From Haliotis rubra (lineage: Eukaryota), in the NCBI RefSeq assembly GCF_003918875.1, contig NW_025766988.1, positions 1,054,001 to 1,118,000 of the forward strand: a stretch of 64,000 nt of DNA, given 5' to 3'. The notes beneath the pieces were generated by a model. It was not told the origin of the DNA. It ran no database searches and saw only the letters and a program-made list of their open reading frames with translations. Numbering within the stretch: the stretch's first letter is position 1; every line of letters begins with the position of its first letter. This document shows positions 24,187-58,932 of the stretch, piece by piece. Made by a program: the position numbers and the translations under genes.

Positions 24187-26421
24187 CTAGGGCCCTGCCG
24201 GACGTTCTATCTTCACAAGGGCTGTGTCCTTCACGTTTACATGATGGGCTTCGACCCTCCCCGAAGTTTGTTCTCGCCTTGTGTAGCACCTACTATAGCT
24301 ATAAGATTTGAAAAGGTGTTGATGAGATCTCCAGTGTTCGATGTTATCAAACATAGGCCATGATTCTCTTTGCACATAGGGCCTCTTCCTGTACTGCGTC
24401 GGAGGACTACAGGACTCTGACCTTTGATCACAAACGACAATTCTAGTGTCACAACGAGAGTTCCTTCCTTCTGGACACTTGGTGGTACAGTCTAAAGCAG
24501 TGTTGCCCCAAAATTCTTTAACAGGTTTTGTGTCATCAACGGCAATGGGCAAATTCGTGGCGTGATGTTTTCTAGGAAGCGTACCTGGAGATACTCTCTC
24601 ATCAGTGGAACTGGACTGAGTTGTACCATCGGTAGAACCTTCTGGTCTACTGTTTGTCACTGAGCAACTGTTGATAGAATGTGATAAATCCGAAGATTCT
24701 GACATAAAAGTTCCGTTCTTCTCTACAAATGAATGGGGAATCTGTGACATCATTGGCACAGATTGAGTTCTGAGTGAATCTGTTGCTGATGCTTTGGTTG
24801 GATGCTGATACCGAACCGGACTCATTGACACCCATTGTGTTGATATGGGAGGTGTTGACTCTGGATTGCCTTCTTTGTTTTCAGGACTAGCTGGAACAGA
24901 AGCATCATCTTCCTCTGGACGATGTTTCGAATCAGATCTAAAAACCTCGTTCTTGTAATCATGTTCCATCTTCAAGGGAGCCATTGGACTCTCTGGCAAG
25001 TTTTCATAGGCGTCTTTTGACGTGTCTGGTGAATATGTACATTGCTGTTCATCTATGATGAGTTTCATCGCGTCTTCTGAATCAGCCAAAATATCAGGAA
25101 TCCATTCTTGGTTATCTTCTTCAGTGAAAGGGATACCCAGTGAGGAATATTCTTTGTGTGATATTTCTTCTTTACATATTGATTCCAACTCATTCTTTTC
25201 TTCAGTTGGAATGACGGGAATGGGTGTTGACGTGTTCAGTATGATATCAGTCAAATGATATTCTTCTCCAGAAACTTCAAAAGACCCCTGACCTGGTGCT
25301 GGTGACATAGTGGTGTCCATGTATCTCGTGGATGTCTTGCTCTTTAGTACCGTTACTTTAGAAGATTTGGTTACTCTAGTCTCCTCAGCTGATGGCACAT
25401 GTAGGATTTTCTTGAGGGAAGATAAAGCCTTGACTCTTTCTACTCCAGGGCATTCCCCTGTCTCTGATGTTTTCTTCTCCAAATGTTCACTGGGCGCCTT
25501 CTTCACGTCTGCTTCTGGTATGTAATATATTTTCTTGTTAAGTAAAACGGAACATGACTTCGTCTTTGTGGTGTGTTCTTTTGTGCCAAGAGCTGCCGGA
25601 GCATTGGTTAAATGCTTTGTGGATTTAGTCTGAAGTGCTTTAGAGAGCAGGTTCGCAGCAGTTGTTTTAGGTTTCTTGTGGTTCATTTGACATGTTCCTT
25701 TGAGTGATGCTAATTTTCCCCCTTCAGACTCAACTTTATGGACGTCTGATTCAAAAACTGTCATTTTGTCTCTTTCGCTTACATCATCATTTTTCTTTTT
25801 CAAAAGGTTTCCACTGCCCAAGAACTTCTTGCTTCTACCTTGACTAGCTCCAGTGAGATTGCTGTGTGATTGCTGCGGAGATTCACTCCTCTTCTTCTTT
25901 ACTTGTCTAGGATCAACTCCAATGAAACAACTATGAGTTGGAGAGCCACTACTCTTGTGAGGCACAACATCCCCCATCTCTATATGGCAATCTTTGTCAG
26001 CAGTTGTGATCATGCCTGTGATTCCATGTGTTGACACGATGGCAGTAGGTACAGCTGCAGCTCCTCCACCATCCTCGGTGTACCTTTTAGGGTAGGAATA
26101 TTTGGGTTTTTCTCCCTGTAACTTGGTGATACACCTGAAGTACGACTTCCCATTACAATTGTGCTCATGTACGTCCGAGTCGATCCAGGACACAGTCAAA
26201 TGCTTCATTTTCTTCTTCGGAAGATTTCTGAGGAACTTGCCTATTTCCTGACGTATTCTCCCTGGCATGAGCCTTTTCAAGTGTCGACGGATGTTGAGTG
26301 ATTTTCCTATGTAGATTGTCTTGTGTTTGTAGGCGATCTTAAACACACCCCTCATTGGGTGTTTGTTTGGCAGCTCATAGTACGGCATATGGCTTGTTTG
26401 GAGGAGCTCACACGGTGGTAC
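24187..26421 (-). CDS. ZnF-GIY-YIG family copy 1, coding exon 2 (GIY-YIG-like domain plus about 630-aa low-complexity tail); joined protein about 892 aa
   Basis: Phase-0 acceptor ttctcctcag|GTA at 26421, in frame with the 733-aa ORF. Motif GVFKIAYKHKTIYIGKSLNIRRHL...HEHNC...SYFRCITKLQGEKPKY. Confidence 0.88.
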   Translation of the reverse strand, partial: VPPCELLQTSHMPYYELPNKHPMRGVFKIAYKHKTIYIGKSLNIRRHLKRLMPGRIRQEIGKFLRNLPKKKMKHLTVSWIDSDVHEHNCNGKSYFRCITKLQGEKPKYSYPKRYTEDGGGAAAVPTAIVSTHGITGMITTADKDCHIEMGDVVPHKSSGSPTHSCFIGVDPRQVKKKRSESPQQSHSNLTGASQGRSKKFLGSGNLLKKKNDDVSERDKMTVFESDVHKVESEGGKLASLKGTCQMNHKKPKTTAANLLSKALQTKSTKHLTNAPAALGTKEHTTKTKSCSVLLNKKIYYIPEADVKKAPSEHLEKKTSETGECPGVERVKALSSLKKILHVPSAEETRVTKSSKVTVLKSKTSTRYMDTTMSPAPGQGSFEVSGEEYHLTDIILNTSTPIPVIPTEEKNELESICKEEISHKEYSSLGIPFTEEDNQEWIPDILADSEDAMKLIIDEQQCTYSPDTSKDAYENLPESPMAPLKMEHDYKNEVFRSDSKHRPEEDDASVPASPENKEGNPESTPPISTQWVSMSPVRYQHPTKASATDSLRTQSVPMMSQIPHSFVEKNGTFMSESSDLSHSINSCSVTNSRPEGSTDGTTQSSSTDERVSPGTLPRKHHATNLPIAVDDTKPVKEFWGNTALDCTTKCPEGRNSRCDTRIVVCDQRSESCSPPTQYRKRPYVQRESWPMFDNIEHWRSHQHLFKSYSYSRCYTRREQTSGRVEAHHVNVKDTALVKIERPAGP

Positions 26422-26654
26422 CTGAGGAGAAGGTATTTATAATATATTCACTTTGTGAACTGCCAGACAAAACAATTTTCATCAACAGAAGTTTGCAATT
26501 GAATACTTAACTGATTATCACTGATACCTGTTCCGCAGAATACGTTGCTGCTCTCAATCTGACATTTGTATTTACAGTGAAGTTGTGACTTGTCATTGTT
26601 TTTTACGTAAACAGAAGCATTATTAAACAAATACTAAACTTTTCCATACATTAC

Positions 26655-27098
26655 CTTCTTAAGCGTATCTGAATTTTGATATTGTGGGGTAATGAAAGAT
26701 CCAGGTACTTGGCTATCATGGGCCAGACTCACACCAGGTATTTTGTTTGTTTTGACTGACCCCAAACCACTGTGTGTCTTTGTACCACTGAGTCTGGCTG
26801 TTTCCTGTTCAGATGTCCAGTCCTTGGCATCTGATCTGTCCGGAAGATATTTTGATTTTCTAGGTCTACCTGGCCCATATATGACAGGTAGTTCATCTTC
26901 TGAGGCAATTTCTGTTTTAGTTCCAAAAATTGGAAAGGACTCTTGTAGATTTGACGTCTTCCTGAGGTCTTCATGCTTCACTGGCAGACAGCCACAATAG
27001 CCGCATGCATGTCCCTCAGGTTGTGGTACATATTGGGCACACTGTCCACATGCGCAGCTTCCCCGGGGAACACCTCGCTTGTCTTCAACGTAGGACAT
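26655..27098 (-). CDS. ZnF-GIY-YIG family copy 1, coding exon 1 (Cys6-His module plus linker)
   Basis: Acceptor cgcag|G at 27116, ATG 27098 (MSYVEDKRGVPRGSCACGQCAQYVPQPEGHACGYCGCLPVKH), phase-0 donor AAG|gtaatg after 26655. Confidence 0.85.
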
Positions 27099-30600: not shown

Positions 30601-30758
30601 NNNNNNNNNNNNNNNNNNNNNNNNNNNNNNNNNNNNNNNNNNNNNNNNNNNNNNNNNNNNNNNNNNNNNNNNNNNNNNNNNNNNNNNNNNNNNNNNNNNN
30701 NNNNNNNNNNNNNNNNNNNNNNNNNNNNNNNNNNNNNNNNNNNNNNNNNNNNNNNNNN
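30601..30758. other. Assembly gap
   Basis: Run of N. Confidence 1.
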
Positions 30759-31406: not shown

Positions 31407-31472
31407 TAGCTAAGATGCATAGCGTTCACTAACATGAGCATTCATGTTAGTGAACGCTATGTATCTTAGCTA
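31407..31472. repeat. 66-bp near-perfect palindrome inserted in a family B copy
   Basis: tagctaagatgcatagcgttcactaacatga-gcat-tcatgttagtgaacgctatgtatcttagcta. Confidence 0.9.
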
Positions 31473-32590: not shown

Positions 32591-32977
32591 TTACACCACC
32601 ATTTGGAAGTAGGTTTTTTTGGTAAGTGGTAGATTGAACTTGGGTCTAGTGCCCTGCAAGTCTTCAATACACTTCATATAACTTTTCTTTGCGCAGTTGT
32701 GGACGTACTTTGTTTCGTCCAGATAATACACTGTCACCTTCTCCAGGTCTCGCTGACTCAGGCGTTTAATAAAGTCGAACAGATCTGACCGGCCGTGACC
32801 GCTGAAGTGACTCTTCAGTGTAGGTTTGATCTTACAGGACATCGGGCCCACGTAGATTGTCTGCCAGTTGTAGGCGATCTTGTACACTCCTTTGACATTA
32901 TATGGGATTTGTTCCATCTCGGTGAAGGGGATGTGGCCTGTCTGCAGAACATTGCATGGCTTCATCTTCAGCAAACC
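32591..32977 (-). CDS. ZnF-GIY-YIG family copy 2, GIY-YIG-like exon (no long tail)
   Basis: Acceptor tttatcctag|G at 32977 (phase 0). GVYKIAYNWQTIYVG...LKSHFSG...VHNC...SYMKCIEDLQGTRPKFN is clearly homologous to copies 1 and 3. Phase does not match the upstream donor. Confidence 0.8.
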   Translation of the reverse strand, partial: GLLKMKPCNVLQTGHIPFTEMEQIPYNVKGVYKIAYNWQTIYVGPMSCKIKPTLKSHFSGHGRSDLFDFIKRLSQRDLEKVTVYYLDETKYVHNCAKKSYMKCIEDLQGTRPKFNLPLTKKTYFQMVV

Positions 32978-33808
32978 CTAGGATAAATGGACAGACAATG
33001 AAAGCAATGTTTAACGCCGCACTCAGCAAGCAATATCACAGCTATATGGGTTAGAACTGATCATGCTCTTCAGTAAGCCATGCTTGCCGTAAGAGGCGAC
33101 TCGAGTAACGGGATCGGGTGGTCAAACTCGCTTACGTGATGAAGGATAACAATATATGGATGAACTTCTTTATTGCTGTGAGAGCGGGTGGTTGACACAT
33201 GTTATCGTATCCCAATTACGTAAATCGATGCTCATGATGTTGATCATTGGATTGTCTGGTCTAGAGTCGATTATATACACACCGCCGCCATATAGCTGTA
33301 ATATTGCTTACACTCACTCACTCACTCAGTACTTGATTCCTATCGCTTCTTTTGTATTGGTTCTTGAGCTGCGTATTTGTGACCTTTCGTCAAAGAAAGT
33401 GCATGTTTCACATTAGAAGCTGGGCTAATGGACTGGTCAGTCATTACAGGGGCGAGTGAGATTACACGATTATTGGCAGGGGGTGTTGGTGGAATGACAT
33501 GAAAAAATGACAGCGAAAGAGGATATGAGTGTGGTGGAGCCGTGTCTTTAAAAAAAGTGAAACGTGAAGATTTCTGTGGCACTTGTGTGTGTTGTAGGGG
33601 GTAATGGTGGATGAAAACACCGTTCATTCGTATTTTGGGATGGGAGTGGGTCCTCTTCTTCCGTAAATAATTTACCAGTCGGTTAGACGGTGCATTTAGT
33701 GCACGTATAACGCCGAGGCGATGGTCAAGTTGTAAGTGACAACATGCCAGTTTGTTCTGCTTTCATGGAATTTGTTACTGAGAAGGTTGATGGTTTTATA
33801 GAACATAC

Positions 33809-34215
33809 CTCAATCCCACGAACAACCGTGTCTGTTTTGGTCCAGTCGTAGTACCCTTCGGCTTCTTTTTGGATGGTTCTCCACTGAGATCATCCAAAGC
33901 ACGTTTCTTGTTCTTGGTCGTCTTCAACAGGCTAGCAAAGTCCACAGTTACGTTTGGGTCCGTGAGCGACCACGACTTTGTATCCGACAGAGGGGCTGAT
34001 GTTGTGCCAGACATATTCTCAGAATATGGCACTAATGAATCACACGAGGTGTCAGAGACGTCATCATCTTCATCCTCATCGGGGCTGACCCTCATCACGA
34101 CGGTATGGTCACTTGGCGCACATCCACACGTGGTGCAGTTGACACCGTCGTCCGGAGCGTTATAGCTGTAGCAGCTACGACATTTGCAACCGAAGTTGAA
34201 TTCTGCTGGTTCCAT
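33809..34215 (-). CDS. ZnF-GIY-YIG family copy 2, coding exon 1 (Cys6-His module, acidic patch, bipartite NLS-like segment)
   Basis: Acceptor cctttcag|C at 34224, ATG 34215, CKCRSCYSYNAPDDGVNCTTCGCAPSDH, strong donor AG|gtatgt after 33809 (phase 2). Confidence 0.78.
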
Positions 34216-35500: not shown

Positions 35501-35721
35501 CGAAAGACATGCCGCTATATATAGAATGACCAGAAATTATTGAGAATTTTAGGAATATGTTTAATTGGATTTCTAGTATTTATATAAACAACCTTGACCA
35601 GCTATCAAGTGCTTAGTTTCATTCAAGAGAGACAACCCTGTTAATCCTTTTTCATTAGTTTGTGAAGAGTTATCCCCATTTGTTTACTTGATAGCAGACG
35701 ACATTTTCAGTGATCCTCAGA

Positions 35722-37236
35722 ATGGCTGATTTAGAGAAGAGGAAGTTGATTTTAGAGTATAACAAGGACATCAGATCAGCTAAAGTGATTTCAAGTAGAA
35801 CAGGCATCCCTTTGTCCACTGTTTATCGTCTTTTGAAAAATATTGCAGATGGACATGGCATTGAGCACCATGGAGGCGCAGGTAGGCCCAGAAAATTGAC
35901 AGTCGGTGACAGGAGGAGGCTTGGTATTCTTGTTTCTAAAAACAAACGAAGGAGTTTAGAAAACTTAAGGCTGGATATGATTGATAGAGGACCTGTGGCT
36001 GTCTGTAAGGAGACAATTAGAACTGAGCTCCATGCAATGGGTTGGCAGAAAAGTAGAGGAATTCCATCACCGATCATGAAACCTGAACAAAAGGAGCGAA
36101 GGTTGAACTGGTGCTTACAGCATAGAAATTTTAACTGGGACAATGTGATTATCTCAGATGAAAGTTCTGTGTGGCTGTTTCCTAATACACTGAAATTCTG
36201 GACCAAACAAACTAAAAAACATTTGTATCAGCGCCCAAAGTACAGTCCGAAATTTAACGTGTGGGGTGGCATATGTGTGTTAGGGGCAACGCCCCTCTGT
36301 GTATTTGAAGGGAATATGAACAGGTCTGTCACACATTGATGTGTACACCCAAGCAGGTCTGTCACACGTTGACCTGTACACTCAAGCAGGTCTGTCACAC
36401 ATTGACCTGTACATCCAAGCAGGTCTGTCACACATTGACATGTACACCCAAGCAGGTCTGTCACACATTGACCTGTACACCCAAGCAGGTCTTTCACACA
36501 TTGACGTATACACCCAAGCAGGTCTGTCACACATTGACATGTACACCCAAGCAGGTCTGTCACACATTGACATGTACACCCAAGCAGGTCTGTCACACAT
36601 TGACCTGTACACCCAAGCAGGTCTGTCACACACTGACTTGTACACCCAAGCAGGTCTGTCACACACTGACCTGTACACCCAAGCAGGTCTGTCACACATT
36701 TATGTGTACACCCAAGCAGGCCTGTCACACATTGATGTGTACACCCAAGCAGGTCTGTCACACATTGACATGTATACCCAAGCAGGTCTGTCACACATTG
36801 TCCTGTATACCCAAGCAGGTCTGTCACACATTGATGTGTACACCCAAGCAGGTCTGTCACACAGCGGTACACAGATATTGTCGAGGGACATTTACTTCCA
36901 TCTGCTCACGTGTTCTATGGAAATGTTTGGATTTTCCAGCAGGACAACGACCCAAAACATCGTTCAAAGCATTCACAGGCCTGGTTTCGGACCCAAAATA
37001 TGACATTATTAGATTGGCCAAGCTATAGCCCTGACCTAAATCCAATAGAAACTGTTTGGGGACTTATGAAGGAAAGTGTCAATAAGAAAAATCTGACAAA
37101 TATTGCTGAAATGAAAGAAGAGGTGGTCCGATATTGGGACAGCATGGACCACGACTTTCTAACTTCTTTGATCAGTAGTATGCCCCGCCGCATTGAAGCC
37201 TGCATTGCTGCCCATGGTGACTTGACAAAATACTAA
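35722..37236 (+). pseudogene. Tc1 transposase, disrupted
   Basis: HTH region, GRPRK linker, ISDES (D1), FQQDNDPKH (D2), WPSYSPDLNPIE (E), with 34 residues between D2 and E. Split by the 33-bp array, which has TGA in the transposase frame. Confidence 0.92.
36321..36863. repeat. 33-bp minisatellite, 16 full units plus a partial unit
   Basis: Unit CAGGTCTGTCACACATTGACATGTACACCCAAG; first and last CAGGTCTGTC lie 528 bp (16 x 33) apart. Confidence 0.97.
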
Positions 37237-40432: not shown

Positions 40433-41456
40433 GGCCTCCCAGATGCTATGTTTGGAACTTTTGTCTGTGGGCGTGCCTCTCCAGAAGCTTTGTTTGGAAC
40501 TTTTGGCTGTGGGCGTGTCTCTCCAGAAGCTATGTTTGGAACTTTTGTCTTTGTCTGAGCTTTGGGAACGTTTCTCTCAGAACGGAAGCTATGTTTGGAA
40601 CTTTTTGTCCGAAGGCCGTGTCTCTCTCTCCAGAAGCTATGTTCGGAACGTTTGTCTGTGTACGTGGCCGCCCAGAAGCTATGTTTGGAACGTTTGTCTG
40701 TGAACGGGGCTCTCCAGATGCTTTGTTTGGAACGTTTGTCTGTGAACGGGGCTCTCCAGATGCTTTATTTGGAACGTTTGTCTGCGAACGTTGCTCTCCA
40801 GATGCTTTGCGTGAAACGTTTGTCTGTAAACGTTGCTCTCCAGATGCTTTGCGTGAAACGTTTGTCTGTAAACGTTGCTCTCCAGATGCTTTGCGTGGAA
40901 CGTTTGTCTGTGAACGTTGCTCTCCAGATGCTTTATTTGGAACGTTTGTCTGTAAACGTTGCTCTCCAGATGCTTTGCGTGGAACGTTTGTCTGTAAACG
41001 TTGCTCTCCAGATGCTTTGCGTGAAACGTTTGTCTGTAAACGTTGCTCTCCAGATGCTTTGCGTGGAACGTTTGTCTGTGAACGTTGCTCTCCAGATGCT
41101 TTATTTGGAACGTTTGTCTGCGAACGTTGCTCTCCAGATGCTTTGCGTGGAACGTTTGTCTGTGAACGTTGCTCCCCAGATGCTTTATTTGGAACGTTTC
41201 TCTGTGAACGGGGCTCTCCAGATGCTTTCCGTGGAACGTTTGTCTGTAAACGTTGCTCTCCAGATGCTTTATTTGTAACTTTTGTCTGTGAACGTGGCTC
41301 CCCAGAAGCTATGTTTGGAACTTTTGTCTGTGAACGTAGCTCTCCAGAAGCTATGTTTGGAACTTTTGTCTGCGAACGTTGCTCTCCAGATGCTTTGCGT
41401 GGAACGTTTGTCTGTAAACGTTGCTCTCCAGATGCTTTGCATGGAACTTTTGTCTG
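40433..41456 (-). repeat. 42-bp coding tandem repeat (14 aa, QTNVPRKASGEQRS), about 24 units including degenerate ones
   Basis: Visible in DNA and protein; continues past the ORF stop at 40530 in a shifted frame. Confidence 0.95.
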
Positions 41457-43166
41457 AGAGCTCTGATTTGAAGGACATGTCTGAGTACTGGAGACAATGG
41501 GCTCACAAACCAGCATCCCTACAGAATTGGCACCTGGGCTTTTGTACGGCAAAGATGTTGTCTCATTCTTTGTTACGAGGTTCCTACTTCCACTAGGCTT
41601 TATACTCCAACCAACAGAGCCCGGTTTGGCGGGTGCAGCTTTTAACATTATCTCCAACAGTTTGGAGATATCTCTTGTAGGTACACCTGTACGTGACCTT
41701 GTGGTATCTGGTTCTGGTTCAGATACAGCATGGGACGTGAGCACAGAAAGTGTTTCTGCGAGACCTGAAGGTGATGTCGAAGAAACAGGAGGTATGTTCC
41801 TTTCGGGATCATTTCCTCCACGAGCACATGTTGTTGATTCCTTGTGTTTTTCATCTGAGTGTTCATTTGTTCCTGGATCTTTCTCTGGGGACCTTAACGC
41901 CCGCCTGGGTTGTATTGCTGTATGTAGAGACTGCGTAGAACTGACGGTGTGTGTCTGTTCATTTCTTTCAGAGGATGCTTGGAAACTGGGGTTTGTTTTC
42001 TGTGAATGTTCCTGGGGAGCTGTTAAGTAATGTCGAAATGTTTCTTCACTGGGCGATTCACATTTATCTCCGGCTGGCTGTAGTTGTAGCTTCTTTTGGA
42101 AATTCTTATCTACCTGTAGTGTGGTAGGACAGGCAGGTGGGTTCTCTTTAGAGACAGTTGAAATTGGGATATTGTCATTTTTATCCTTTCTAATGTTTGT
42201 GCGTCCAGCCATGCATCCAACTGTATCATGTTGGATTCTCTCTTCAAATTCAGGTGATCGGGGGGAAATACAGAACTGTTGAGGCAACTCACGGGTTGTA
42301 AGATTTTCATGGTTCGAGGACATATCAACAGAAGCTCCTCGTATTGACTGAGATCTTTGTTTGTATGATGACTTGGTCATGACTGGGCTTCTTGGGATGT
42401 TGCTCAGCGACATCTCTGGTGTGTCTATGTTCTGCATCTTTAAGTTCATGTTTGTACTGGGCACCGTGGTTGAAAAGTATAAGTTTGCTGTTTCACTTCG
42501 GCAGATAGGAGTGTCCTTGGGACTCTTTGTCAGACAATGATGCATTGAATGTTCTACATGTTGATCAGTCTTCATTTTCTTTGAATCGGTATGGAACTGC
42601 GATTTCTCTCGATCCTCTTCCGCGGGTCTCTTCCTCGACATCAAACTGAAATCAGGTGCAGTATGTTTATCTAACGAGCTCAATCTCCTTCGAAAAACCT
42701 TTTTTCGCTCTTCTGTACCGTTGCTAGGTCGGACAGATACATCCTGTGATTGTCCATTTTCATGTGTGAAGGTTTTGGAATCAGCATTGACAACTGCCAC
42801 ACTGGCAGTCGACATGGAGCAGAGAATCGGTTGTATGTCGTTAAACTTTGGTTTCTTTCCCTGTAGGTATGTGATACATTCCAGGTAGGACTTACCACAG
42901 TTGTGGACATGTATGGTCTTATCCAGCCAGTACACTGATACCATCTCAAGTTCCTCCTCGGGGAGATTCAGCAAGAATTCTATTAAGTCCTGCTTGCCAT
43001 TACCACTGAACTGCTTCCGAAGATCCTTGATGATATTGCTTGATGAACCGACATAGATGGTCTCCCACCTGTAGGCAACCTTGTACACTCCACTAGGCCT
43101 TAACTTTGTCCGAACGATGACTGGGTATGGAACATGACCTCTGTGCAACAGCTTGCATGGTTTCAT
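40530..43166 (-). CDS. ZnF-GIY-YIG family copy 3, GIY-YIG-like exon with long disordered tail and 14-aa tandem repeats (878 aa; probably extends to 40321 across a 1-nt frameshift)
   Basis: Acceptor tttatttccag|ATG at 43166. GVYKVAYRWETIYVGSSSNIIKDL...HVHNC...SYLECITYLQGKKPKFN, followed by about 2.3 kb of open frame. Confidence 0.87.
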   Translation of the reverse strand: MKPCKLLHRGHVPYPVIVRTKLRPSGVYKVAYRWETIYVGSSSNIIKDLRKQFSGNGKQDLIEFLLNLPEEELEMVSVYWLDKTIHVHNCGKSYLECITYLQGKKPKFNDIQPILCSMSTASVAVVNADSKTFTHENGQSQDVSVRPSNGTEERKKVFRRRLSSLDKHTAPDFSLMSRKRPAEEDREKSQFHTDSKKMKTDQHVEHSMHHCLTKSPKDTPICRSETANLYFSTTVPSTNMNLKMQNIDTPEMSLSNIPRSPVMTKSSYKQRSQSIRGASVDMSSNHENLTTRELPQQFCISPRSPEFEERIQHDTVGCMAGRTNIRKDKNDNIPISTVSKENPPACPTTLQVDKNFQKKLQLQPAGDKCESPSEETFRHYLTAPQEHSQKTNPSFQASSERNEQTHTVSSTQSLHTAIQPRRALRSPEKDPGTNEHSDEKHKESTTCARGGNDPERNIPPVSSTSPSGLAETLSVLTSHAVSEPEPDTTRSRTGVPTRDISKLLEIMLKAAPAKPGSVGWSIKPSGSRNLVTKNETTSLPYKSPGANSVGMLVCEPIVSSTQTCPSNQSSQTKVPCKASGEQRLQTNVPRKASGEQRSQTKVPNIASGELRSQTKVPNIASGEPRSQTKVTNKASGEQRLQTNVPRKASGEPRSQRNVPNKASGEQRSQTNVPRKASGEQRSQTNVPNKASGEQRSQTNVPRKASGEQRLQTNVSRKASGEQRLQTNVPRKASGEQRLQTNVPNKASGEQRSQTNVPRKASGEQRLQTNVSRKASGEQRLQTNVSRKASGEQRSQTNVPNKASGEPRSQTNVPNKASGEPRSQTNVPNIASGRPRTQTNVPNIASGERDTAFGQKVPNIASVLRETFPKLRQRQKFQT

Positions 43167-44826
43167 CTGGAAATAAATGCAGTATTTTATCTATCATTAC
43201 TCATATCATAAGACCCGGCTTAGAATTGATGTTCAGTAACAAATGCGTATCGTAAGAGGTGATTGATGGGATCGGGTGGTCAGGCTCGATGACTTAGTTG
43301 ACATATGTCATCGTAACCCAATTGCGTAGATCGATGCTCATGCTGTTGATCACTTGATTGTCTGGTCCAGATTCCATTATTTACAGACCGCCGCCGTATA
43401 GCTGGAATATTGCTGAGTGCGGAGTAAAACAACCAACCAACCAACCAACCAACCAACATGACAGGTGTTATTGGTGAGCCCCGTTTGGGCCCAACTTCCA
43501 TACAAGTCATCAAGCCAGCCTTTAAAACATCATGAGCGAGTGAGTTGTGATTTAATATTGAATGCCAGTGTGAAAGAATCACCGGTCTTGACAATCATCA
43601 GAAACAAATTCCGTTTGGTGTAAAGGGAAAATAGTTCTGAAATTATATAACTAGATCACTGAAAATCACTGATGACACCAGGTGTTCGCGAAGAGGGTGC
43701 GCATGTCCTGCCCTATCGGTAGCTTTGAACACAGCTTTAAATACTGTCCGTTTCTTCACTTTCACGCGAAAGCAAAGCCAGAAATAATGTAGGTTTCTGG
43801 GTATTTTACGAAATTTGTGAAAAGGACAAGCATGCTGATTACAATCCTGAAACCACGATCATGGGTTTCTGGCACGCTTAACACTGTGCGAACTGTGCCT
43901 GGGACGACTCGGCGTCCCCGCTCCATCCCTGCCTGACGTTTGATTTTACGCCAGGTGGTTCCACTTTCAAACTTTACCAAAAGAGGGTCTAACAATACAT
44001 AGTATTCGATGAACATTCTCATGTTTGTAATTCACATAATTTTAGCAGTTGTCAAGCATTTAGCACAAAGTATGAAATGTGTTTTAAACTATACCAACTA
44101 AATATTTATGCTGAACTAGTGACGCTTTTGTCAAAGGTGGTCACGAATGAGTCTAAAAGTTGCCATAGCTTTAGTACAGTGCATAAATGAACATTTAAGA
44201 TATATTGAACATTTTCCGCGTAGAAAAGGTAACTTATGTGTTTATGATCAGTTAACAACGAAATGAAGTCATTAATTGGCTATTGACCAATATAGTTTTG
44301 GAAGCATTCCTGTTACTTGGGGACGGTGTGGTTCGATGCTCGATCACACGTATTGGTACAATATGTGCAACCCGTCCCCCTTTATGTCACCGGGATATGT
44401 CTGAAGGCGCCGTTAAACAACATTCTCTCTCATTTGTATTACTTACGTCAATCAAGGGTAAATGGTTTGTTTTTGCCATCGTAGTTGGTTTGTCTTGTTT
44501 TCTATTCAACAACAATCCTGTCTCCGCAGATAACACTGTATCTATATCATGTCCTGCATCAATGCATGGTTTTTGGAGCTCTCTCAAGCGTTGGGACTCT
44601 TTTTGGGGGGTTATTCCAGGTTCCGACCAAGCGAGCAATGGTTATCAGTTAGGCATTTAGTCATCGATACAAACAAAATACGCTTTAAATAACGCTGCTT
44701 TCTGCTTGGATGTTATAAAGCAACGCTGTTGGAACCGTCATTACAAGCACGTGTTATCAGTCTCGATGTTGTTGGTTCTAACAAAAACCATTCCTCATTT
44801 ACTACAGGAGACGGACTGTCAACCCA

Positions 44827-44961: not shown

Positions 44962-45803
44962 CACATTGCTGTCAGTGTTAGTCGGTGATGGATGTGATAT
45001 GACCTGGAGCTGGGGGTCCAGCAGGGAGGGTGCACCCGTGGATTTCTAGAATAAATAGTCCTCGGTACTTCGCCACAGTTATACAAAGATGTGCTGAAAC
45101 AGAAAAGGTACATAGACGTATTTTGTGAGTGGGTGGGAGAGTTTGGTTTAACTTGGTTTTATGCGGTACGTCCGTTTATGCACGATGTGTTATCTGTACG
45201 AGCAGGAGGAAAGCCGAAGTGATTCGGGTCCTCAAACTTAACCACTTTGGTGAAACCAACGGAATTCTAACACACGATCATATTTTCCTGCGCCCTAAAC
45301 GTACACAACTCTGCACAGAGAATTGGACCAACATTTCAATTGATGCACCATTACTTCATGGCCATAATAGGTCACTGTCTCGACTGCTGTTGTTGTATAT
45401 GACTTGATGCGCTGACATAGCACCAATGAATGGAGTTCCGTATTCCCGGTTCACTGGTAAGCATACAACTTAAGCTGCCTCTGAGACGTTCGAAGGTCAA
45501 TATCTCACCTTACAGAAGCACATTTCAAACAGTCATTTACGTGAGAAGTCACGACGTGTGCTACCCGTGCTTCAGTGAAGGGCACGGTGCCGTTGCACAA
45601 AGCAACGTCCCTCTACGAATGTCCGTAGTCTATGTTAAGGTATGGGTGAGTGAGCTTTAACCACTAGGCTATCCCACCGCCCTGTTAAGGTACTGGAGCT
45701 ACGATCATTTCAGCGCTAAGATTCACCTTGTAAAACGGCACCCAGGACAGAAGTCCTATAAGCCCTCTGGAGACTCTCGAACGTTGTCACCCATACAGTT
45801 ACA

Positions 45804-48456: not shown

Positions 48457-49825
48457 CTGGACGAGACAAACGTCACAAGCATCTACACAAATGACAAGTG
48501 TCAACCAAGCCAGCGAGCCTGACCACCCGATCCCGTTAGTCGCCTCTTACGACAAGCACGGGTTACTGAAGACCAATTCTAACCTGGATGTTCATGGTGA
48601 TGAATAGTTTGAGAACTTTACAAAATATGAAGTATATCCATTTCAGACTTTGTTATGAATTATTTCAAGCCGTTAAAAGTGCAAGATTGAGAAGTGAGAT
48701 GAAGGACAATAAAAACTTTTCTACATGCCAGTTTGATGGTTCTGTCATGGACTGTATTCAACCATTCACGGAAGTGGAAGTGTTCAAACTGATTAAGGAT
48801 AGTAAGCCAACGACATGTGTCTTGGATCCTATGACGACCAACGTTCTGTTAGAATTCACTTATGATCTTATTGTTCCTATAACTAAACTGGTAAATTTGA
48901 GTTTAACTTCAGGCGCGGTTCCTACACCCCAAAGGAGGCGGTCATCAGACCATTAATAAAAAAAAGCGGGATCTGATCAAAATGACTTGAAAAATATCCG
49001 TCCTGTCTCCAACTTACCCTTTCTATCCAAACTTGTTAAAACGGCTGTGAAAGTGAGACTCAACTCCCATCTTACAGTGCACGGACTTATGGAAATGTTC
49101 CAGTCTGCTTATAGCCCACGTCATAGTACGGAAACGGCACTCATTCGTGTTATGAATGATTTATTTTGCTCGGTTGACAGCGGAAAGATTGCCCTACTTG
49201 TACTTCTTGACCTATCAGCAGCTTTTGACACTCTTGATAACCATACACTTCTGAGACAACTTGAGACTTCATTTGGAATAGCCGGAATGGCACTATCACG
49301 GTTTGTTTCAAGTCTCAGCGATTGACAGCTGTGAGTTATCATAAATAATCATGCATCTAAAAAAAGCCCTTTATCCTGTGGAGTACGGCAAGGATCGGTT
49401 CTAGGGCCTGTGTTGCTTACGCCTTACGCCAGAGATCTTGGCGATGTAATCAGTACACATGATGTGAGCCACCATTTTTACGCAGATGACACCCAGTTGT
49501 CCGATTCCCGCAATCCCAGTACTGCAGAGCAAATGTGTGAGCGACTGTACAAGTGGACGTAGAAACATGGATGACACATTTGCTGAACTGAATGAGTCGA
49601 AGACCGAGGCGTTGTTTGCCGGCAAGAATCTTCATCAAGTGATGACTAACTCATTCACAGTTTGCAGCACTGTCATTCCATTTTCGAAAGCCGTAAAAAA
49701 TCTTGGACTTCATGTGGACTGTGATCTCTCTTTAAAAGCTCATATTGACACAGTCTGCACAACCTGTTACTTCCATTAGCACCATCAGAAGCTCTCTTAC
49801 TACAGCGACAGCTCATGCTCTAGTG

Positions 49826-54760: not shown

Positions 54761-56208
54761 AATGCAGGCGCGTAGCAAGCCATTTGTCCAAAGGTTGCAA
54801 ATCTTTATATTTAGCTAGTATTGTGGGCTTTACCCAACTTTCACAGCAAAAATCATGTGTAAGCCCGGGCGATTATGGTAGCTACGCCCTTGTAATTGGA
54901 TCGGATGGTCAGGCTCCGTGAGCAGGTTCACAGATAAAATGTATCGAAAATACGGTTGCGCACCATAGAGAAAATGACCAGTCTTCCCACTCGTTTCGCT
55001 CGCGTGTAGTAAGACAGGTCATTTTCTATGTGCTGCGCAACGCGATTTGCGCTACAGTTTGCCTGTGGTTGGTTGATACATGTCGTATATAGTGATCGAG
55101 GATCATGATATTAATCGACTCGTGAAGATACGGGCTAGAATTGAACTTTTGAACTTCCGTAACCCTTGTGACCTTGCACAATGTGGCGTAATGTCCCCAT
55201 CTATATAACCTGTCTGACGTGATCAGGCAGGGAGACGAGGCGAGGAGACGGACTCAAATCATCGACAGAAGCGGACGGATTGTGTGGCTAGTCGGGGCGT
55301 CGGCCATGGCCGCCGCCTCACCAACGACTACGTCGACGATGAAGAATCGCCGTCTGGCTACTGCCTGTGCGTCTATTAAAGTGACAGAGCGGGTCCCCGC
55401 GTCGGGGGCATTGGCCACTCGGTCCCGGTGTGCGATCTGTCACGTGATCACCATCAACTTGTACCATTTGGACCATTTGTTCCCCAACCATAATAAACAT
55501 AGGGGTCTCTGTCTTCATGTCTTCAACTTTATCGCTGACTTTTGTCTTCCGTATGTTGTATACCATCCGAGAGCATCCCGACGAACGCTCTTGGTCAATA
55601 TCATTATACTGTCTATTCCAGCCCTTGTCAGGGTTGTTTCCTTTTCCTTTTTATTGCTTTTAGGGAACGTTCATAATTTATGGCAGTGTTCGAGGATCAT
55701 GATTTTAATCAACCCGTGAAGATGCGGGTTAGAATTGGTCTTCAGTAACCAATGCTTGTCGTGAGAGGCGACTAACGGGATCGGGTGGTCAGGCTCGGGT
55801 GGTCAGGCTCGCCGTCTCGCTGTCGATGTTATTCATCCAAGCACTGCACGCATATCAATGTAAATATATTATATATGCAATTAAACATCAAAAACATGCG
55901 TGTTGGTGTTTGGTGAAAACTGAAATAAAAAATGTAATAACTGTTAATTTTCAGAACTCGTTTACACCAAAACAACAGTTTCAAGATCAACCAAAACGTT
56001 TTAGTGTCGAAAGTTACAAAATGTTTGACTGATCATTTGACTCCCGAGATCCCCCCAATTCCGAATATTATTTGATGCGCCTCAACGATACATTCAGTAA
56101 TGACTTGCTTTTATGGTGGCGACAGGGTTTTAACTCTTTTTCACCGTTACCGTTCCAGATCTCGCAAACAGCCGAACTTACTGTATACATTTTGTTCTAC
56201 TCCTAGAC

Positions 56209-56570
56209 ATGGCAGTGTTCACGGACATCAACAGAGATAAGTACGGGGTTGTTCGGGGTCGGTGTAAGGACTGCCCCGAGGAGTGTCCACAGTATTCCCA
56301 GCCTGTCCTCAGACACAACTGTACGTATTGCGGGTGTCCGGCAGGTCAACATGAGAGGGTGGAACCTCGACCGGAACTCATCATCAAGACAGAACCTGGG
56401 GAGGAGGAGGCACGATCTCCGGGACGGAGAGATGGCAGACCAACACCGGGTCCATCCAGAAGACCAGATGGCTGGACCACGGTCCCACCCCAGCCTGGTC
56501 CCTCCAGGCGAAATGAGTCGCCTCACCGGGATGAATCGCGAACAGTAATCCAGGTACAATTTCAGGTTAG
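56209..56570 (+). CDS. ZnF-GIY-YIG family copy 4, coding exon 1 (Cys6-His module plus P/R/G-rich linker)
   Basis: Acceptor ttctactcctag|AC at 56207, ATG 56209, DKYGVVRGRCKDCPEECPQYSQPVLRHNCTYCGCPAGQH. Candidate donors after 56553 and 56565 (phase 0) or 56570 (phase 2, ag|gtaaaa). Confidence 0.82.
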
Positions 56571-57247
56571 GTAAAAATTTTAGCTTTTAGAAAGTGTTAT
56601 TTTGTCATCTTGATTGTCAACGTTTTACCTTAACTGATAGTTTATCCTGCGTAATCAACAGTGATCCAGGGTTGTTTTTCCCTCGAGGAGCATTTCCCCA
56701 TAACCTGCACACAAGGGATGTCACGATACATATAAGTTTCATAAGTATCACGATACCTTTTTCGCGGCGTTATTGCGTAAATTGAGTTACATTTTGAACA
56801 TTAATATTTCATATTTTATAATTGTCCATGAAAAGATCAACATTTTGTATTCTCAGAGATTAAAAAGTTCTCATTTTCCATCTTTGTGCATGAAAAAATA
56901 ATCATTTATAACTCTCATAACATAAAATTAAACATGATACAATTGCAAAATGTAAACGATATATAAACATATGTCCTGCATCCGCTCCTGCACCATAAAC
57001 CCGGCGATTGGTCTCTTAGGCGCTGGGTATTTTAATCTTTTATTTTGCCAGTTGGGGTACAATCTGAGCTTACCATTTGTAAACCTGTAATCACGGAAAC
57101 TACATGTACCTGACTGCCACTGCCAGCATAATGTGTCTTGCATAGAACATTAATAGGGCAAAGTAAAACTATCATTGTGACACATACTTGATTATTATAT
57201 AGAAATAATTAATACAGTTCATGGTCACTGAACCATTATAGAATCCA

Positions 57248-57926
57248 TACTCAACAATAAAAGTCCTTGTGACACATTCAAAGATATAGAAGAAAAAATC
57301 TGAAACCAAATGCAATACAAATACATGTAATGTACAGAACAGACACCTGACTTGTGAATGTTGACCATTATCTTGGATTAGACACGTTTGTAAACGGTAA
57401 GATGGCCATGTGAATGTTGTCATGCTAAAATCACAGTTCACAGTCTAATACCGGGTAAGACCCCCAGTGCTGGTCAGCCACTGCGGGGACGGTCTCTGAC
57501 GTGAGTGATTTGCTGATGTTATTACCACAAGTTCCATACAGTGTTCCATTAAACCGACGAGCAACTTCCCGTTGCGCGGTTCCGGCTTTGAGCATTCCAA
57601 GTGCCCGCCACCGTTCATTTTCAGAAAGCCTTGACATCAAAAGAGTTTACTTGTGGTTCGAAATTCAATGTTTTTTCAGGCAACACTCATTGAACGTGTA
57701 TTTATCCACAATGAAAAAGATCTATCCGCAACTCATGTTTAAATACCCACAGACTGACTCGTTTTTCACGAAATTGCACGTGCAAAGTCAATTTCACCTG
57801 GTTTTCAAACAGTCACTTAAAAGTTGCTCTGTTATCGTATTATGGACGTGTTTTAATGGTTTGGGTTAAACTTGATCAAATTTATAAAAGAAATGTATGT
57901 GTCACAAGAACTTTTGTTGTTGAGTA
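57248..57926 (-). mobile_element. Internally deleted Tc1-like element in the copy 4 intron
   Basis: TIR TACTCAACAA(T/C)AAAAGT(C/T)CTTGTGACACAT; transposase N-terminal HTH remnant MSRLSENERWRALGMLKAGTAQREVARRFN. Confidence 0.82.
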
Positions 57927-58529
57927 TATTTACTAGAACACAGGATTACACCTGCCTATAAATATGAGATATTGTTTTGATATAAACAATTCATTCAAAC
58001 AAACTTGCAATTGCATACCTGTAATTAGGAAAACTACATGGTGAGGGCTGCCACTGCCAGCATGTTGTGTGCCAGGCAAAGGGCAGCATTTATATCACCT
58101 GAGTGCACAGACTGCAGGAGCCGTCAGAGCCCAGGATGTACCTGCTGGCAGCTAGCTGATCAGTATGGCAAGCTGTGAAGGACACAAATTGTGAATTTGT
58201 AAAATGTGCCAGGGGTGCTATGCTATATATACAAATAAATTTGTAAAACCCTAAGCGAGCCACCTGTAAAATTCAGATATTCGTCGCCAATTTGAACCCT
58301 AATTTGTAGCCGTTTTCTGATTGGTGAATTCCGTTCGTCCGTCTCGCGTTTGATTGGACGGTCATAGGTCGCTCAAAGGACAGCTGGCGCGACCTTCTAC
58401 TGGGGTTTGTTGGACTCAGTATAACAGTGTAACGAATAATACTGAGCCTAAGTTACTTAGTTTGTTGTGACATAAAGATTGATTTTAATTGATTTAACAA
58501 ATTTCTGAGCTTACCTTTGTTGGTTTCAG

Positions 58530-58932
58530 AAAGGTTGTAAGACGTTATTTGAGAATGAGGGTGTCGAGTATTCTCAAGTTAAGAGACACCTCAGCAGAAC
58601 AGAAGCGTGGCGTGTTCACAATCCTGTGGAAGGGGAAAATAATTTATGTTGGAGATCCAAAGAAGACGCCCATATTAACTTGTCTTCGAAGCATATTTAA
58701 TGGTGGAAGCAATCAAGACATCAGCAAATGTTTGAAAAACTTACGCAACGATTTGAAAAGAGCTCACGTCAGAATCGCCTGGCTGAAACACAAAGATGAT
58801 GACCCGCACCTCAAGACGTGTAGAGAAGGCAAGAAAGGGTTGTCATATCGACAATGTCTGTCAAATCTGCAGGGGGAGAAGCCAAGGGATGTGCTTAAAG
58901 GTTTAATGAGAGAGGAAACCATCAATCTGTAG
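58530..58932 (+). CDS. ZnF-GIY-YIG family copy 4, GIY-YIG-like exon; joined protein about 254 aa
   Basis: Acceptor ctttgttggtttcag|A at 58530 (phase 2, matches donor 56570; AAG|G at 58534 would match the phase-0 donors). GVFTILWKGKIIYVG...IFNGGSNQDISKCLKNL...SYRQCLSNLQGEKP. Confidence 0.8.

What the first reader, a model, noticed from the sequence alone, without database searches (positions are those of the whole stretch)
24187..58932. Tandem cluster of spliced genes fusing a Cys6-His zinc-finger module to a GIY-YIG-fold domain
Seen: four ORFs (24187-26421, 32591-32977, 40530-43166, 58530-58932) share G-V-[YF]-x9-Y-[IV]-G...G-x3-[DE]-[IL]...C...SY-x2-C-[IL]-x2-LQG-x-[KR]-P. Each has an upstream exon encoding C-x1-2-C-x2-3-C-x2-Y-x8-C-x2-CGC-x4-H (decayed in copy 3). 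Canonical GT-AG sites join the two exons in frame in copies 1 and 4, although the ORF track lists them as unrelated. Known: the animal GIY-YIG proteins I know are SLX1, ANKLE1/LEM-3 and Penelope-like element endonucleases, and none has this architecture. There is no RT or TIR around these copies. Inference: an old, expanded, fast-evolving host gene family, possibly undescribed, acting on nucleic acid or chromatin, for example in genome defence or immunity.
Basis: partly seen in the sequence, partly recalled or inferred. Interest (0 to 1): 0.9.

Follow-up and report, generated by a model that had tools for sequence, protein, structure and literature searches.

The report
Abalone cluster of dead-nuclease genes
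Four neighbouring abalone genes join a small zinc-binding module to a nuclease-like (GIY-YIG) domain that has lost its cutting residues; the family is real, conserved among abalones and undescribed, but nothing yet shows what it does.

Summary
The window is Haliotis rubra (abalone) DNA. The four GIY-YIG-like domains and three Cys6-His modules are real and far beyond chance. The same four genes sit in the same order in H. asinina.

The C-terminal domain is a true GIY-YIG fold. This rests on an AlphaFold model, on solved-structure matches that are all GIY-YIG nucleases, and on a sequence chain through small molluscan GIY-YIG proteins to Pfam and UvrC. All four copies lack the catalytic arginine, and most lack other catalytic residues, so they are probably nuclease-dead. 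Both domains are nevertheless under purifying selection.

The zinc module belongs to a eukaryote-wide family with no Pfam model. It is closest in shape to the plant ZF-HD dimerisation finger and the Testin/LMCD1 cysteine-rich domain.

- Copy 3 has no detectable zinc exon.
- Copies 2 and 4 each carry a one-base frame break in this assembly.
- The named members of the fusion are all Haliotis.

This is a new variant of a known kind, of moderate interest; its function is inferred only.

The parts
26655..27098 (-). Copy 1, coding exon 1 (148 codons). The zinc module is at 26973-27056, followed by a disordered linker. The donor GT is at 26654-26653.
   Evidence: Reading of the sequence; identical to residues 1-148 of NCBI product P0001; regex and profile hits.
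24187..26421 (-). Copy 1, exon 2 (744 codons plus stop). The GIY-YIG-fold domain is at 26089-26421, followed by a tail of about 630 residues of low complexity.
   Evidence: AlphaFold model pLDDT 85.8. dN/dS is 0.10 for the domain and 0.66 for the tail.
33809..34215 (-). Copy 2, exon 1. The zinc module is at 34105-34188; it lacks the N-terminal D-x-R-G-V-x-R-G part. The A run at 33835-33838 is one base shorter than in H. asinina, which shifts the frame before the canonical donor (GT at 33808-33807).
   Evidence: The NCBI H. rubra product P0017 is a 138-aa zinc-only protein. The H. asinina orthologue P0004 (262 aa) has both domains.
32591..32977 (-). Copy 2, exon 2: the GIY-YIG-fold domain, then a stop.
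   Evidence: dN/dS 0.16 against H. asinina.
44447..44479 (-). Copy 3, first coding exon as in NCBI product P0005 (11 residues). It has no zinc module.
   Evidence: The start of P0005 matches the ORF at 44387-44638(-). The H. asinina orthologue P0007 starts the same way.
40530..43166 (-). Copy 3, exon 2. The GIY-YIG-fold domain is at 42837-43166. A long tail follows, with a 42-base (14-residue) tandem repeat at 40626-41456.
   Evidence: dN/dS is 0.20 for the domain and 0.67 for the tail.
56209..56553 (+). Copy 4, exon 1. The zinc module is at 56263-56352. The canonical donor used by NCBI's model and implied by the paralogues is at 56553|GT; RNA contigs stop at about 56504-56512.
58530..58932 (+). 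Copy 4, exon 2: the GIY-YIG-fold domain. The reference has one base more at 58603-58606 than H. asinina and the RNA contigs, so the conserved N-terminal helix and the GIY motif are in different frames in the window as written.
   Evidence: NCBI's P0178 patches the frame with an acceptor at 58534.
30601..30758 (.). Assembly gap in intergenic DNA between copy 2 and copy 1. It touches no exon of the family.
   Evidence: the flanks are colinear with H. asinina L002 11962-12294 and 12390-12512.

Best explanation
SHOWN. This is a tandem cluster of four paralogous host genes in abalone (Haliotis). In three of them a phase-0 intron joins an N-terminal zinc-binding module to a GIY-YIG-fold domain. That domain is followed either by a stop (copies 2 and 4) or by a long disordered tail (copies 1 and 3). 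The zinc module has six Cys and one His, and its shape class is that of the plant ZF-HD dimerisation finger and the Testin/LMCD1 cysteine-rich domain. The GIY-YIG domain descends from small stand-alone molluscan GIY-YIG proteins that keep the full Tyr, Tyr, Arg, His, Asn set. The fused abalone branch has lost the catalytic Arg in every member, and most members have also lost the His/Tyr, the Glu and the Asn.

INFERRED. The domain no longer cuts DNA. It serves as a binding module for nucleic acid or for a partner protein. The zinc module mediates pairing or protein contact, as its plant and vertebrate look-alikes do. The tails, which carry basic patches that look like nuclear-import signals, act as flexible scaffolds. 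The proteins would then be non-catalytic adaptors, most likely nuclear. Whether they serve defence, repair or chromatin is not known.
For: - Identity and synteny.
- Fold: AlphaFold pLDDT 85.8. The top 16 solved entries by VIA-align are all GIY-YIG (Z 7.2 T4 EndoII, 6.4 UvrC, 5.7 Eco29kI), then Z drops to 2.3. AlphaFold DB and Atlas hits are all GIY-YIG.
- Sequence chain: a profile of the window copies finds small molluscan proteins at E 1e-12 to 1e-4. Of the 32 members of the family alignment (13 fused-branch, 19 small), 14 hit Pfam PF01541 (best E 1.9e-8) and 17 hit GIY_YIG_2. The family profile hits T. maritima UvrC at E 8.4e-5.
- Residue mapping onto UvrC Y19, Y29, R39, Y43 and N88: R39 becomes H, T, D, C in copies 1-4; position 43 becomes L, H, Q, I; N88 becomes S, N, N, V. 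The small proteins keep R, H and N invariant.
- Selection: dN/dS against H. asinina is 0.10-0.22 for the GIY domains and 0.055-0.062 for the zinc modules of copies 1 and 4.
- Single origin of the fused branch: SH-aLRT 85.
- Zinc module shape: ZF-HD_dimer TM 0.70 (rmsd 2.0 over 39 residues), LMCD1 0.66, testin-like 0.63, generic zinc ribbons 0.44 or less.
- Expression: RNA contigs cover and bridge both exons of copy 4.
- Precedent: ANKLE2 has an inactive GIY-YIG-like domain in animals (PMC13179284).
Against: - No biochemical or expression-context data. Loss of activity is read from alignment only.
- The position of the metal-binding Glu is uncertain. By register from the P-K-[YF]-N anchor it falls on the family's conserved Cys. 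The small proteins have an invariant Glu six residues upstream, which copy 4 keeps.
- Copy 1 has two Arg just before the canonical position (R-R-H), which could compensate.
- Nuclear location is guessed from basic patches.
- The zinc module's kinship to ZF-HD and LMCD1 rests on predicted shapes of a 44-residue domain. No Pfam HMM or PDB sequence match supports it.
- Copy 1 was not found in the RNA runs that hold copy 4.
Confidence: 0.6

Rival explanations
1. They are still active nucleases with a rearranged active site. A neighbouring Arg in copy 1, the retained Glu in copy 4, or the conserved Cys would take part in catalysis or metal binding. The zinc module would aim the cut.
For: The GIY and YIG tyrosines are largely kept. 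Copy 1 has R-R-H at the Arg site, and copy 4 keeps the C-x-E-G glutamate. Strong purifying selection acts on the domain. GIY-YIG enzymes are usually tethered to a DNA-binding module (PMC8557442).
Against: The Arg equivalent to UvrC R39 is H, T, D or C in the four copies and is absent in all other fused members, while it is invariant in the small paralogues. Two of the four copies also lack the Asn. The first Tyr is Phe in copies 1 and 4. Arg and Glu are described as crucial for function (PMC13179284).
Confidence: 0.15
2. They are pseudo-enzyme partners of the canonical small GIY-YIG proteins of the same genomes. They pair with the small proteins, or compete with them for the same substrate, and so target or restrain a real nuclease. 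Plant MIF proteins restrain ZF-HD factors in a comparable way.
For: Abalone genomes carry both kinds. One small gene lies 3.2 Mb from the cluster on the same H. cracherodii chromosome, and H. rubra has LOC124280682. The fused branch arises once from within this molluscan family. The zinc module resembles a dimerisation finger.
Against: There is no evidence of interaction or co-expression. GIY-YIG domains are mostly monomeric catalytic units (my knowledge). Some small members have signal-peptide-like starts (P0020, P0033), which would place them in another compartment.
Confidence: 0.15
3. They are remnants of a mobile element (a Penelope-like or homing endonuclease) or decaying pseudogenes, not working host genes.
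For: Copies 2 and 4 are frame-broken in this assembly. An RT fragment and a Tc1 remnant lie in the cluster. Some Penelope endonucleases have an upstream Cys motif.
Against: The order and orientation are the same in H. asinina. dN/dS is 0.06-0.22 on both domains. The orthologues are intact. RNA contigs nearly identical to copy 4 carry the intact frame. There are no Cys between GIY and YIG, which all canonical Penelope endonucleases have. The RT fragment is 7 kb away from copy 4 and separate from it.
Confidence: 0.05

Closest known systems
Small stand-alone molluscan GIY-YIG proteins (e.g. H. cracherodii 'uvrABC system protein C-like' XP_071088857; Tegillarca granosa and Saccostrea cucullata 'GIY-YIG domain-containing' proteins)
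   Same: They have the same domain with the same extra features: an N-terminal helix with a Cys, a C-x-E-x2-Y-x2-C stretch and Q-G-x-x-P-K-[YF]-N. They are the nearest sequence relatives.
   Different: They are 96-166 residues long, with no zinc module and no tail. They keep the Arg, His, Glu and Asn that the window's copies have lost.
UvrC N-terminal domain, T4 endonuclease II, R.Eco29kI (solved GIY-YIG nucleases)
   Same: Same fold (Z 5.7-7.2) and the same GIY / YIG / P-K-Y-N motifs. The family profile hits UvrC at E 8.4e-5.
   Different: The catalytic Arg is absent. The Glu position is taken by Cys or is lost. The partners are eukaryotic (a zinc module and a disordered tail).
ANKLE2 uncharacterised domain 1 (an inactive GIY-YIG-like domain of animals)
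   Same: An animal protein with a GIY-YIG-like fold that lacks key catalytic motifs, showed no nuclease activity and is thought to act as a scaffold (PMC13179284).
   Different: ANKLE2 has no recognisable GIY or YIG motifs, whereas the abalone domains keep them. The architecture differs (ankyrin + LEM), and ANKLE2 is present in all animals.
Penelope-like element endonuclease
   Same: A GIY-YIG domain in invertebrate genomes, sometimes preceded by a Cys-rich linker.
   Different: No CCHH motif with two Cys between GIY and YIG; no RT in the same reading frame; R, H, E, N not conserved; single-copy syntenic genes with an intron.
SLX1 and ANKLE1
   Same: Animal proteins that combine a GIY-YIG domain with another module.
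   Different: SLX1's zinc finger is C-terminal and of RING/PHD type (my knowledge). ANKLE1 has ankyrin repeats and a LEM domain. No RING, ankyrin or LEM family was hit here. Both are active enzymes.
Plant ZF-HD dimerisation finger (PF04770) and the Testin/LMCD1 N-terminal cysteine-rich domain
   Same: These are the best shape matches of the zinc module (TM 0.70, 0.66, 0.63; rmsd 2.0-2.4 over 39-40 residues), well above generic zinc ribbons. The spacing C-x2-C-G-C-x4-H is the same (my memory for the plant and vertebrate sequences).
   Different: No HMM match to PF04770. No homeodomain, PET or LIM neighbour. The conserved D-x-R-G-V-x-R-G lead-in appears to be particular to this family.

Membership tests
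GIY-YIG superfamily | Beta-beta-alpha-(alpha)-beta-alpha core fold | tested here: met
   AlphaFold model with E26-32, E35-42, H45-52, H60-66, H70-75, E76-82, H95-103. The 16 best solved entries are all GIY-YIG, Z 4.1-7.2, and the next is 2.3. Also.
GIY-YIG superfamily | GIY and YIG motifs about 10 residues apart | tested here: met
   G-V-[YF]-x9-Y-[IV]-G in all four copies. The first Tyr is Phe in copies 1 and 4.
GIY-YIG superfamily | Sequence match to the family models | tested here: inconclusive
   No window copy hits PF01541 on its own. The link is indirect but consistent: 14 and 17 of the 32 members of the family alignment hit PF01541 and PF20815, and the family profile hits UvrC at E 8.4e-5.
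GIY-YIG superfamily (active nucleases) | Catalytic Arg after the YIG motif (UvrC R39) | tested here: not met
   H, T, D, C in copies 1-4. It is absent in all fused members and invariant in the small paralogues.
GIY-YIG superfamily (active nucleases) | Metal-binding Glu (UvrC E76) and the Asn of P-x-Y-N (N88) | tested here: inconclusive
   By register from the Asn anchor, the Glu position is a conserved Cys. The alternative Glu six residues upstream is absent in copies 1-3 and kept in copy 4. The Asn is S, N, N, V. No residue-level structural superposition was available.
Penelope-like element endonuclease | CCHH motif with two Cys between GIY and YIG; RT in the same ORF | tested here: not met
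   There is no Cys between the motifs. The only RT fragment lies at 48987-49325, separate from every copy. The definition comes from PMC8557442.
SLX1 / ANKLE1 | C-terminal RING/PHD finger (SLX1); ankyrin repeats plus LEM domain (ANKLE1) | tested here: not met
   A Pfam scan of all exons found none of these. The zinc module is N-terminal and of another shape class.
ZF-HD_dimer (PF04770) / Testin-LMCD1 cysteine-rich domain | Shape of the zinc-binding module | tested here: met
   TM 0.70 ZF-HD, 0.66 LMCD1, 0.63 testin-like. Mouse LMCD1 residues 20-57 at rmsd 2.3. An amphioxus family member gives the same top hits. All are predicted models of a 44-residue domain.
ZF-HD_dimer (PF04770) / Testin-LMCD1 cysteine-rich domain | Sequence match to the family model; usual neighbours (homeodomain, or PET + LIM) | tested here: not met
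   None of the 93 module sequences hits PF04770. No PET, LIM or homeodomain was found in the ten long members scanned.

The most novel reading that the evidence does not exclude
The N-terminal Cys6-His module is an uncatalogued, eukaryote-wide targeting or pairing domain, and the ancestor of both the 'plant-specific' ZF-HD finger and the Testin/LMCD1 cysteine-rich domain. It is repeatedly hooked to effector domains of innate defence: a PARP catalytic domain in protists, a very large inducible GTPase in an ostracod, and GIY-YIG in abalone. On this reading the abalone cluster encodes nuclease-derived sensors or adaptors of a genome-defence or antiviral pathway.
Probability: 0.15. Interest if true: 0.75.

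Novelty: new variant of a known kind. Interest (0 to 1): 0.45.

Why it matters
Animals were thought to have very few kinds of GIY-YIG protein: SLX1, ANKLE1, Penelope endonucleases and the degenerate ANKLE2 domain. This finding adds two things. First, molluscs have a lineage of small canonical GIY-YIG proteins. Second, abalones have a fused, expanded, apparently nuclease-dead offshoot that has been kept under selection, which is a clean case of a nuclease turned into a binding module. It also exposes a zinc module with no family model that occurs from protists to amphioxus. That module links by shape the 'plant-specific' ZF-HD finger with the vertebrate Testin/LMCD1 domain. If the link holds at the sequence-profile level, it would revise the stated plant restriction of that finger. 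Practically, the H. rubra assembly has one-base indels that break two of the four genes and mislead the annotation.

Tried and rejected
- A profile of the three close copy-1 orthologues found no shorter relatives. It was too narrow; the mixed profile A5 worked.
- A PDB sequence search with only the four window domains gave noise. The 32-sequence profile was needed.
- Foldseek of the zinc model against the PDB gave only rubredoxin and NZF noise (E above 4). A PDB sequence search with the zinc profile gave nothing usable. A Pfam scan of 93 modules gave scattered zinc-ribbon hits and no common family.
- I searched for a decayed zinc exon upstream of copy 3 by tblastn, regex and profile and in H. 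asinina. Only 45564-45629(-) shows a faint resemblance (E 0.66), so I rejected it as not significant.
- I considered a Penelope or other transposon origin and rejected it.
- I considered that the RNA contigs lacking a base at 58603/58606 come from the paralogue P0173. I rejected this because P0173 differs at more than ten residues over the stretch, while contig 14 differs by two letters and one gap in 202 bases.
- The reported joint 56512->58528 has non-canonical ends (AT..TC) on the reference. It is equally explained by the canonical 56553/58530 splice in an allele lacking 56513-56551 (39 bases, in frame). The contigs cannot tell the two apart.
- Copy 1 was not found in the RNA runs that hold copy 4.
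- A word search of earlier findings was blank.
- Rfam and tRNA scans of the very deeply covered stretch 55588-55881 found nothing.

Full report
WHAT THE WINDOW IS. The long exon of copy 1 is 100% identical to an NCBI protein of Haliotis rubra (blacklip abalone), 'uncharacterized protein LOC124283497', 892 aa. Orthologues exist in H. asinina (90% identical over the domain) and H. cracherodii (80%). So this is abalone nuclear DNA.

THE OBSERVATION.
S-Y-x2-C-[IL]-x2-L-Q-G-x-[KR]-P. They lie at 26089-26421(-), 32591-32977(-), 42837-43166(-) and about 58530-58932(+), with 18 invariant columns.
- Three upstream ORFs carry C-x1-2-C-x2-3-C-x2-Y-x8-C-x2-C-G-C-x4-H, at 26973-27056(-), 34105-34188(-) and 56263-56352(+).
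- tblastn of each copy against the window finds the other three GIY domains at E 1e-8 to 1e-35 and nothing else below 0.09.
- Family profiles searched against all stop-to-stop ORFs of the window score the four GIY domains at E 1e-28 to 1e-42 (next best 1.6) and the three zinc modules at 1e-11 to 1e-17 (next best 0.17). The repetition is real, and the count is exactly four plus three.

SPLICING, COPY BY COPY.
- Copy 1. Exon 1 ends at 26655 with A-A-G|G-T-A-A-T-G. Exon 2 begins at 26421 after a pyrimidine tract and an AG. The phase is 0. The NCBI product reads straight across this junction, as do the orthologous models. The RNA runs that hold copy 4 do not hold copy 1.
- Copy 2. The canonical donor (exon end 33809, G-T-A-T-G-T) is in phase 2 on the reference, while the acceptor at 32977 needs phase 0. 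An alignment with H. asinina shows the cause: an A run at 33835-33838 has four A where H. asinina has five. The H. asinina product (P0004, 262 aa) has both domains. The H. rubra annotation instead ends as a 138-aa zinc-only protein (P0017).
- Copy 3. The acceptor sits directly before the ATG at 43166. The NCBI products in H. rubra (P0005) and H. asinina (P0007) both begin with an 11-residue exon, at 44447-44479(-) in the window, and have no zinc module. I found no significant remnant of a zinc exon in either species.
- Copy 4, the reference. But it reads the start of exon 2 in a frame that destroys the conserved N-terminal helix with its Cys, which copies 1-3, all paralogues and H. asinina keep.
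- Copy 4, the extra base. The reference has one base more at 58603-58606 than H. asinina.
- Copy 4, the RNA evidence. Contigs from four small RNA libraries of the same species label cover 56205-56512 and 58528-59050, and leave most of the intron empty. In two runs they bridge 56512->58528. They lack one base at 58603 or 58606. One such contig differs from the window by only two letters and that gap over 202 bases.
- Copy 4, the result. With that base left out, the zinc module and the GIY domain form one ORF of 233 residues in the ancestral frame. NCBI's own model (P0178, 247 aa) patches the extra base with a shifted acceptor at 58534.
- Copy 4, the verdict. The reference carries either an assembly error or a frameshift allele. 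The bridging joint has non-canonical ends on the reference. It is equally explained by the canonical 56553/58530 splice in an allele that lacks 56513-56551.

THE GAP. The N run at 30601-30758 lies between the stop of copy 2 and the start of copy 1. A second N run lies at 18402-18546, outside the finding. The flanks of the first gap match one colinear stretch of H. asinina intergenic DNA (coordinates only, nothing filled). It affects none of the exons.

THE C-TERMINAL DOMAIN IS A GIY-YIG FOLD.
- No window copy hits Pfam by itself.
- A language-model feature search already pointed to GIY-YIG clusters.
- A mixed profile of the window's modules, searched against 1.84 billion representative proteins, found only 169 proteins at E 1e-3 or better.
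- Those that match the GIY part fall in two tiers. The first tier is abalone proteins like the window's. The second tier is small proteins of 96-166 residues from molluscs: Haliotis, Tegillarca and Saccostrea, plus unlabelled assemblies. One of these is named 'uvrABC system protein C-like'.
- Of the 32 aligned members, 14 hit PF01541 (best 1.9e-8) and 17 hit GIY_YIG_2.
- The family profile hits the solved UvrC N-terminal domain at E 8.4e-5 and T4 endonuclease II at 2.6e-3.
- An AlphaFold model of copy 1's domain (pLDDT 85.8, pTM 0.80) has the expected strand-strand-helix-helix-helix-strand-helix order.
- Foldseek ranks GIY-YIG nucleases first. The second-look aligner gives Z 7.2 (T4 EndoII; plant GrxS16 N-domain), 6.4 (UvrC) and 5.7 (Eco29kI). 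All 16 best entries are GIY-YIG, and the next is at 2.3.
- AlphaFold DB and Atlas searches return GIY-YIG proteins throughout, the best at TM 0.77 and 27% identity.

BUT PROBABLY NOT A WORKING NUCLEASE.
- The HMMER alignment to T. maritima UvrC fixes Y19, Y29, R39, Y43 and N88. The mutant titles of the PDB entries name Y19, Y29, Y43 and N88. R39 and E76 as catalytic residues come from my knowledge of Truglio et al. 2005.
- At R39 the four copies have H, T, D, C. At position 43 they have L, H, Q, I. At N88 they have S, N, N, V. At Y19 they have F, Y, Y, F.
- The small molluscan proteins keep R, H and N without exception.
- Counting back from the P-K-[YF]-N anchor, UvrC's E76 falls on the family's conserved Cys. 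The small proteins also have an invariant Glu six residues upstream. That Glu is absent in copies 1-3 and kept in copy 4. I could not get a residue-level superposition to decide which is the metal ligand.
- Either way, every fused member lacks the Arg. This agrees with an earlier first-stage note on this window (s1-335110).

YET CONSERVED. Pairwise dN/dS between H. rubra and H. asinina:

| Region | Copy 1 | Copy 2 | Copy 3 | Copy 4 |
|---|---|---|---|---|
| GIY domain | 0.10 | 0.16 | 0.20 | 0.22 |
| Zinc module | 0.055 | 0.71 | none | 0.062 |
| Linker | 0.50 | 0.34 | - | 0.67 |
| Tail | 0.66 | - | 0.67 | - |

- The tails carry species-specific tandem repeats. H. rubra copy 3 has a 42-base unit at 40626-41456, and the H. 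asinina orthologue has a different 22-residue unit.

THE ZINC MODULE.
- The same search found about 120 proteins that match only the module. From 93 of them the consensus is D-x-R-G-V-x-R-G-x-C-x(1-2)-C-x(2-3)-C-x2-[YF]-x(6-10)-C-x-Y-C-G-C-x-P-x2-H. Five Cys and the His are invariant.
- It usually sits at the very N-terminus. It occurs in bivalves (six to nine tandem copies), a wasp, amphioxus, an ostracod and protists.
- In longer proteins it is joined to a PARP catalytic domain or to a URGCP/VLIG-type large GTPase. Most partners are unknown.
- It has no Pfam family and no solved relative by sequence.
- Its AlphaFold model (pLDDT 85) finds, by shape, the plant ZF-HD dimerisation finger (TM 0.70, rmsd 2.0 over 39 residues), LMCD1 (0.66) and testin-like proteins (0.63). 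Generic zinc ribbons score 0.44 or less.
- Swiss-Prot models give the same picture, including mouse LMCD1 residues 20-57. So does an amphioxus member of the family.
- This supports the other first-stage note (s1-335222) at the level of shape, but not yet of sequence.
- The ZF-HD finger is described as plant-specific and is known as a dimerisation region (PMC8004245).

RANGE AND ORIGIN.
- All named fused proteins are from Haliotis: rubra, asinina, rufescens and cracherodii. H. rufescens has at least ten loci. H. rubra has further copy-4-like genes on this scaffold (LOC124283491) and on another.
- H. asinina has the same four genes in the same order and orientation.
- In a tree of the domain core, the fused proteins form one side of a branch (SH-aLRT 85) against the small molluscan proteins. 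There are two subclades, copy-4-like and copy-1/2/3-like.
- A small canonical gene with introns lies 3.2 Mb from the cluster in H. cracherodii.

NOT A TRANSPOSON.
- Penelope-like endonucleases are defined by a CCHH motif with two Cys between GIY and YIG, and they keep R, H, E and N (PMC8557442). The window's domains have neither feature.
- The RVT_1 fragment (48987-49325) and the broken Tc1 transposase (35710-37236) are separate intergenic insertions.

HOW IT MOST LIKELY WORKS (INFERENCE).
- A canonical small nuclease gene gained an upstream exon encoding a pairing or protein-contact zinc module. It then lost its catalytic residues and was kept and multiplied as a binding module.
- ANKLE2's inactive GIY-YIG-like domain is a precedent in animals (PMC13179284).
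- The tails and basic patches suggest flexible nuclear scaffolds.
- A role in defence is possible. Hints are the family expansion, a TRIM-NHL neighbour, and the module's fusion to PARP and a large GTPase elsewhere. None of this has been tested.

LIMITS.
- There is no per-residue structural alignment.
- Only one reads call was available, and it returned assembler contigs rather than reads.
- The tissues of the runs are unknown.
- The NCBI models are predictions.

Noticed in passing
window 9042-11042 (-): An intact 666-aa ORF with RING, two B-boxes, a coiled coil and NHL repeats (TRIM-NHL type) lies 13 kb from the cluster.
   Followed up: partly
window 35710-37236 (+): A Tc1/mariner transposase remnant (HTH_Tnp_Tc3_2 and DDE_3 pieces). 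It is split by a 33-base tandem repeat of 16.5 copies at 36321-36863.
   Followed up: partly
window 48588-49779 (+): Broken reverse-transcriptase ORFs (RVT_1 at 48987-49325) lie between copies 3 and 4. This is a decayed retroelement not linked to the GIY genes.
   Followed up: partly
window 55588-55881; also about 33090-33160 and 43240-43300: A short dispersed repeat (core ...accacccgatccc...) has word depth in the thousands in RNA contigs and many copies in the H. asinina locus. It has no Rfam or tRNA match and is probably a SINE-like element.
   Followed up: partly
window 33835-33838 and 58603-58606: Two one-base indels relative to H. asinina (and, for the second, relative to RNA contigs) break copies 2 and 4 in this assembly and distort the NCBI models P0017 and P0178. 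Residual homopolymer or indel errors in the H. rubra assembly are a likely cause.
   Followed up: yes
proteins P0010, P0013, P0062, P0121 and about 90 others (not in the window): The Cys6-His module is a eukaryote-wide N-terminal domain without a Pfam model. It occurs in tandem arrays in freshwater mussels and is fused to a PARP catalytic domain (protist) and to a VLIG/URGCP GTPase (ostracod). Several members share a second C-terminal Cys motif, C-x2-C...[YF]-C.
   Followed up: partly
proteins P0020, P0033 (not in the window): Some small molluscan GIY-YIG proteins start with a hydrophobic, signal-peptide-like stretch. The small family has up to four conserved Cys, which hints at secreted, disulfide-bonded or metal-bound forms.
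   Followed up: no
window 18402-18546: A second assembly gap (145 N) lies outside the finding.
   Followed up: no
protein P0170 (H. rufescens, 385 aa; not in the window): A paralogue carries two zinc modules in series before the GIY domain: a variant C-R-H-C-G-C type, then the copy-4 type. So module number varies within the family.
   Followed up: no
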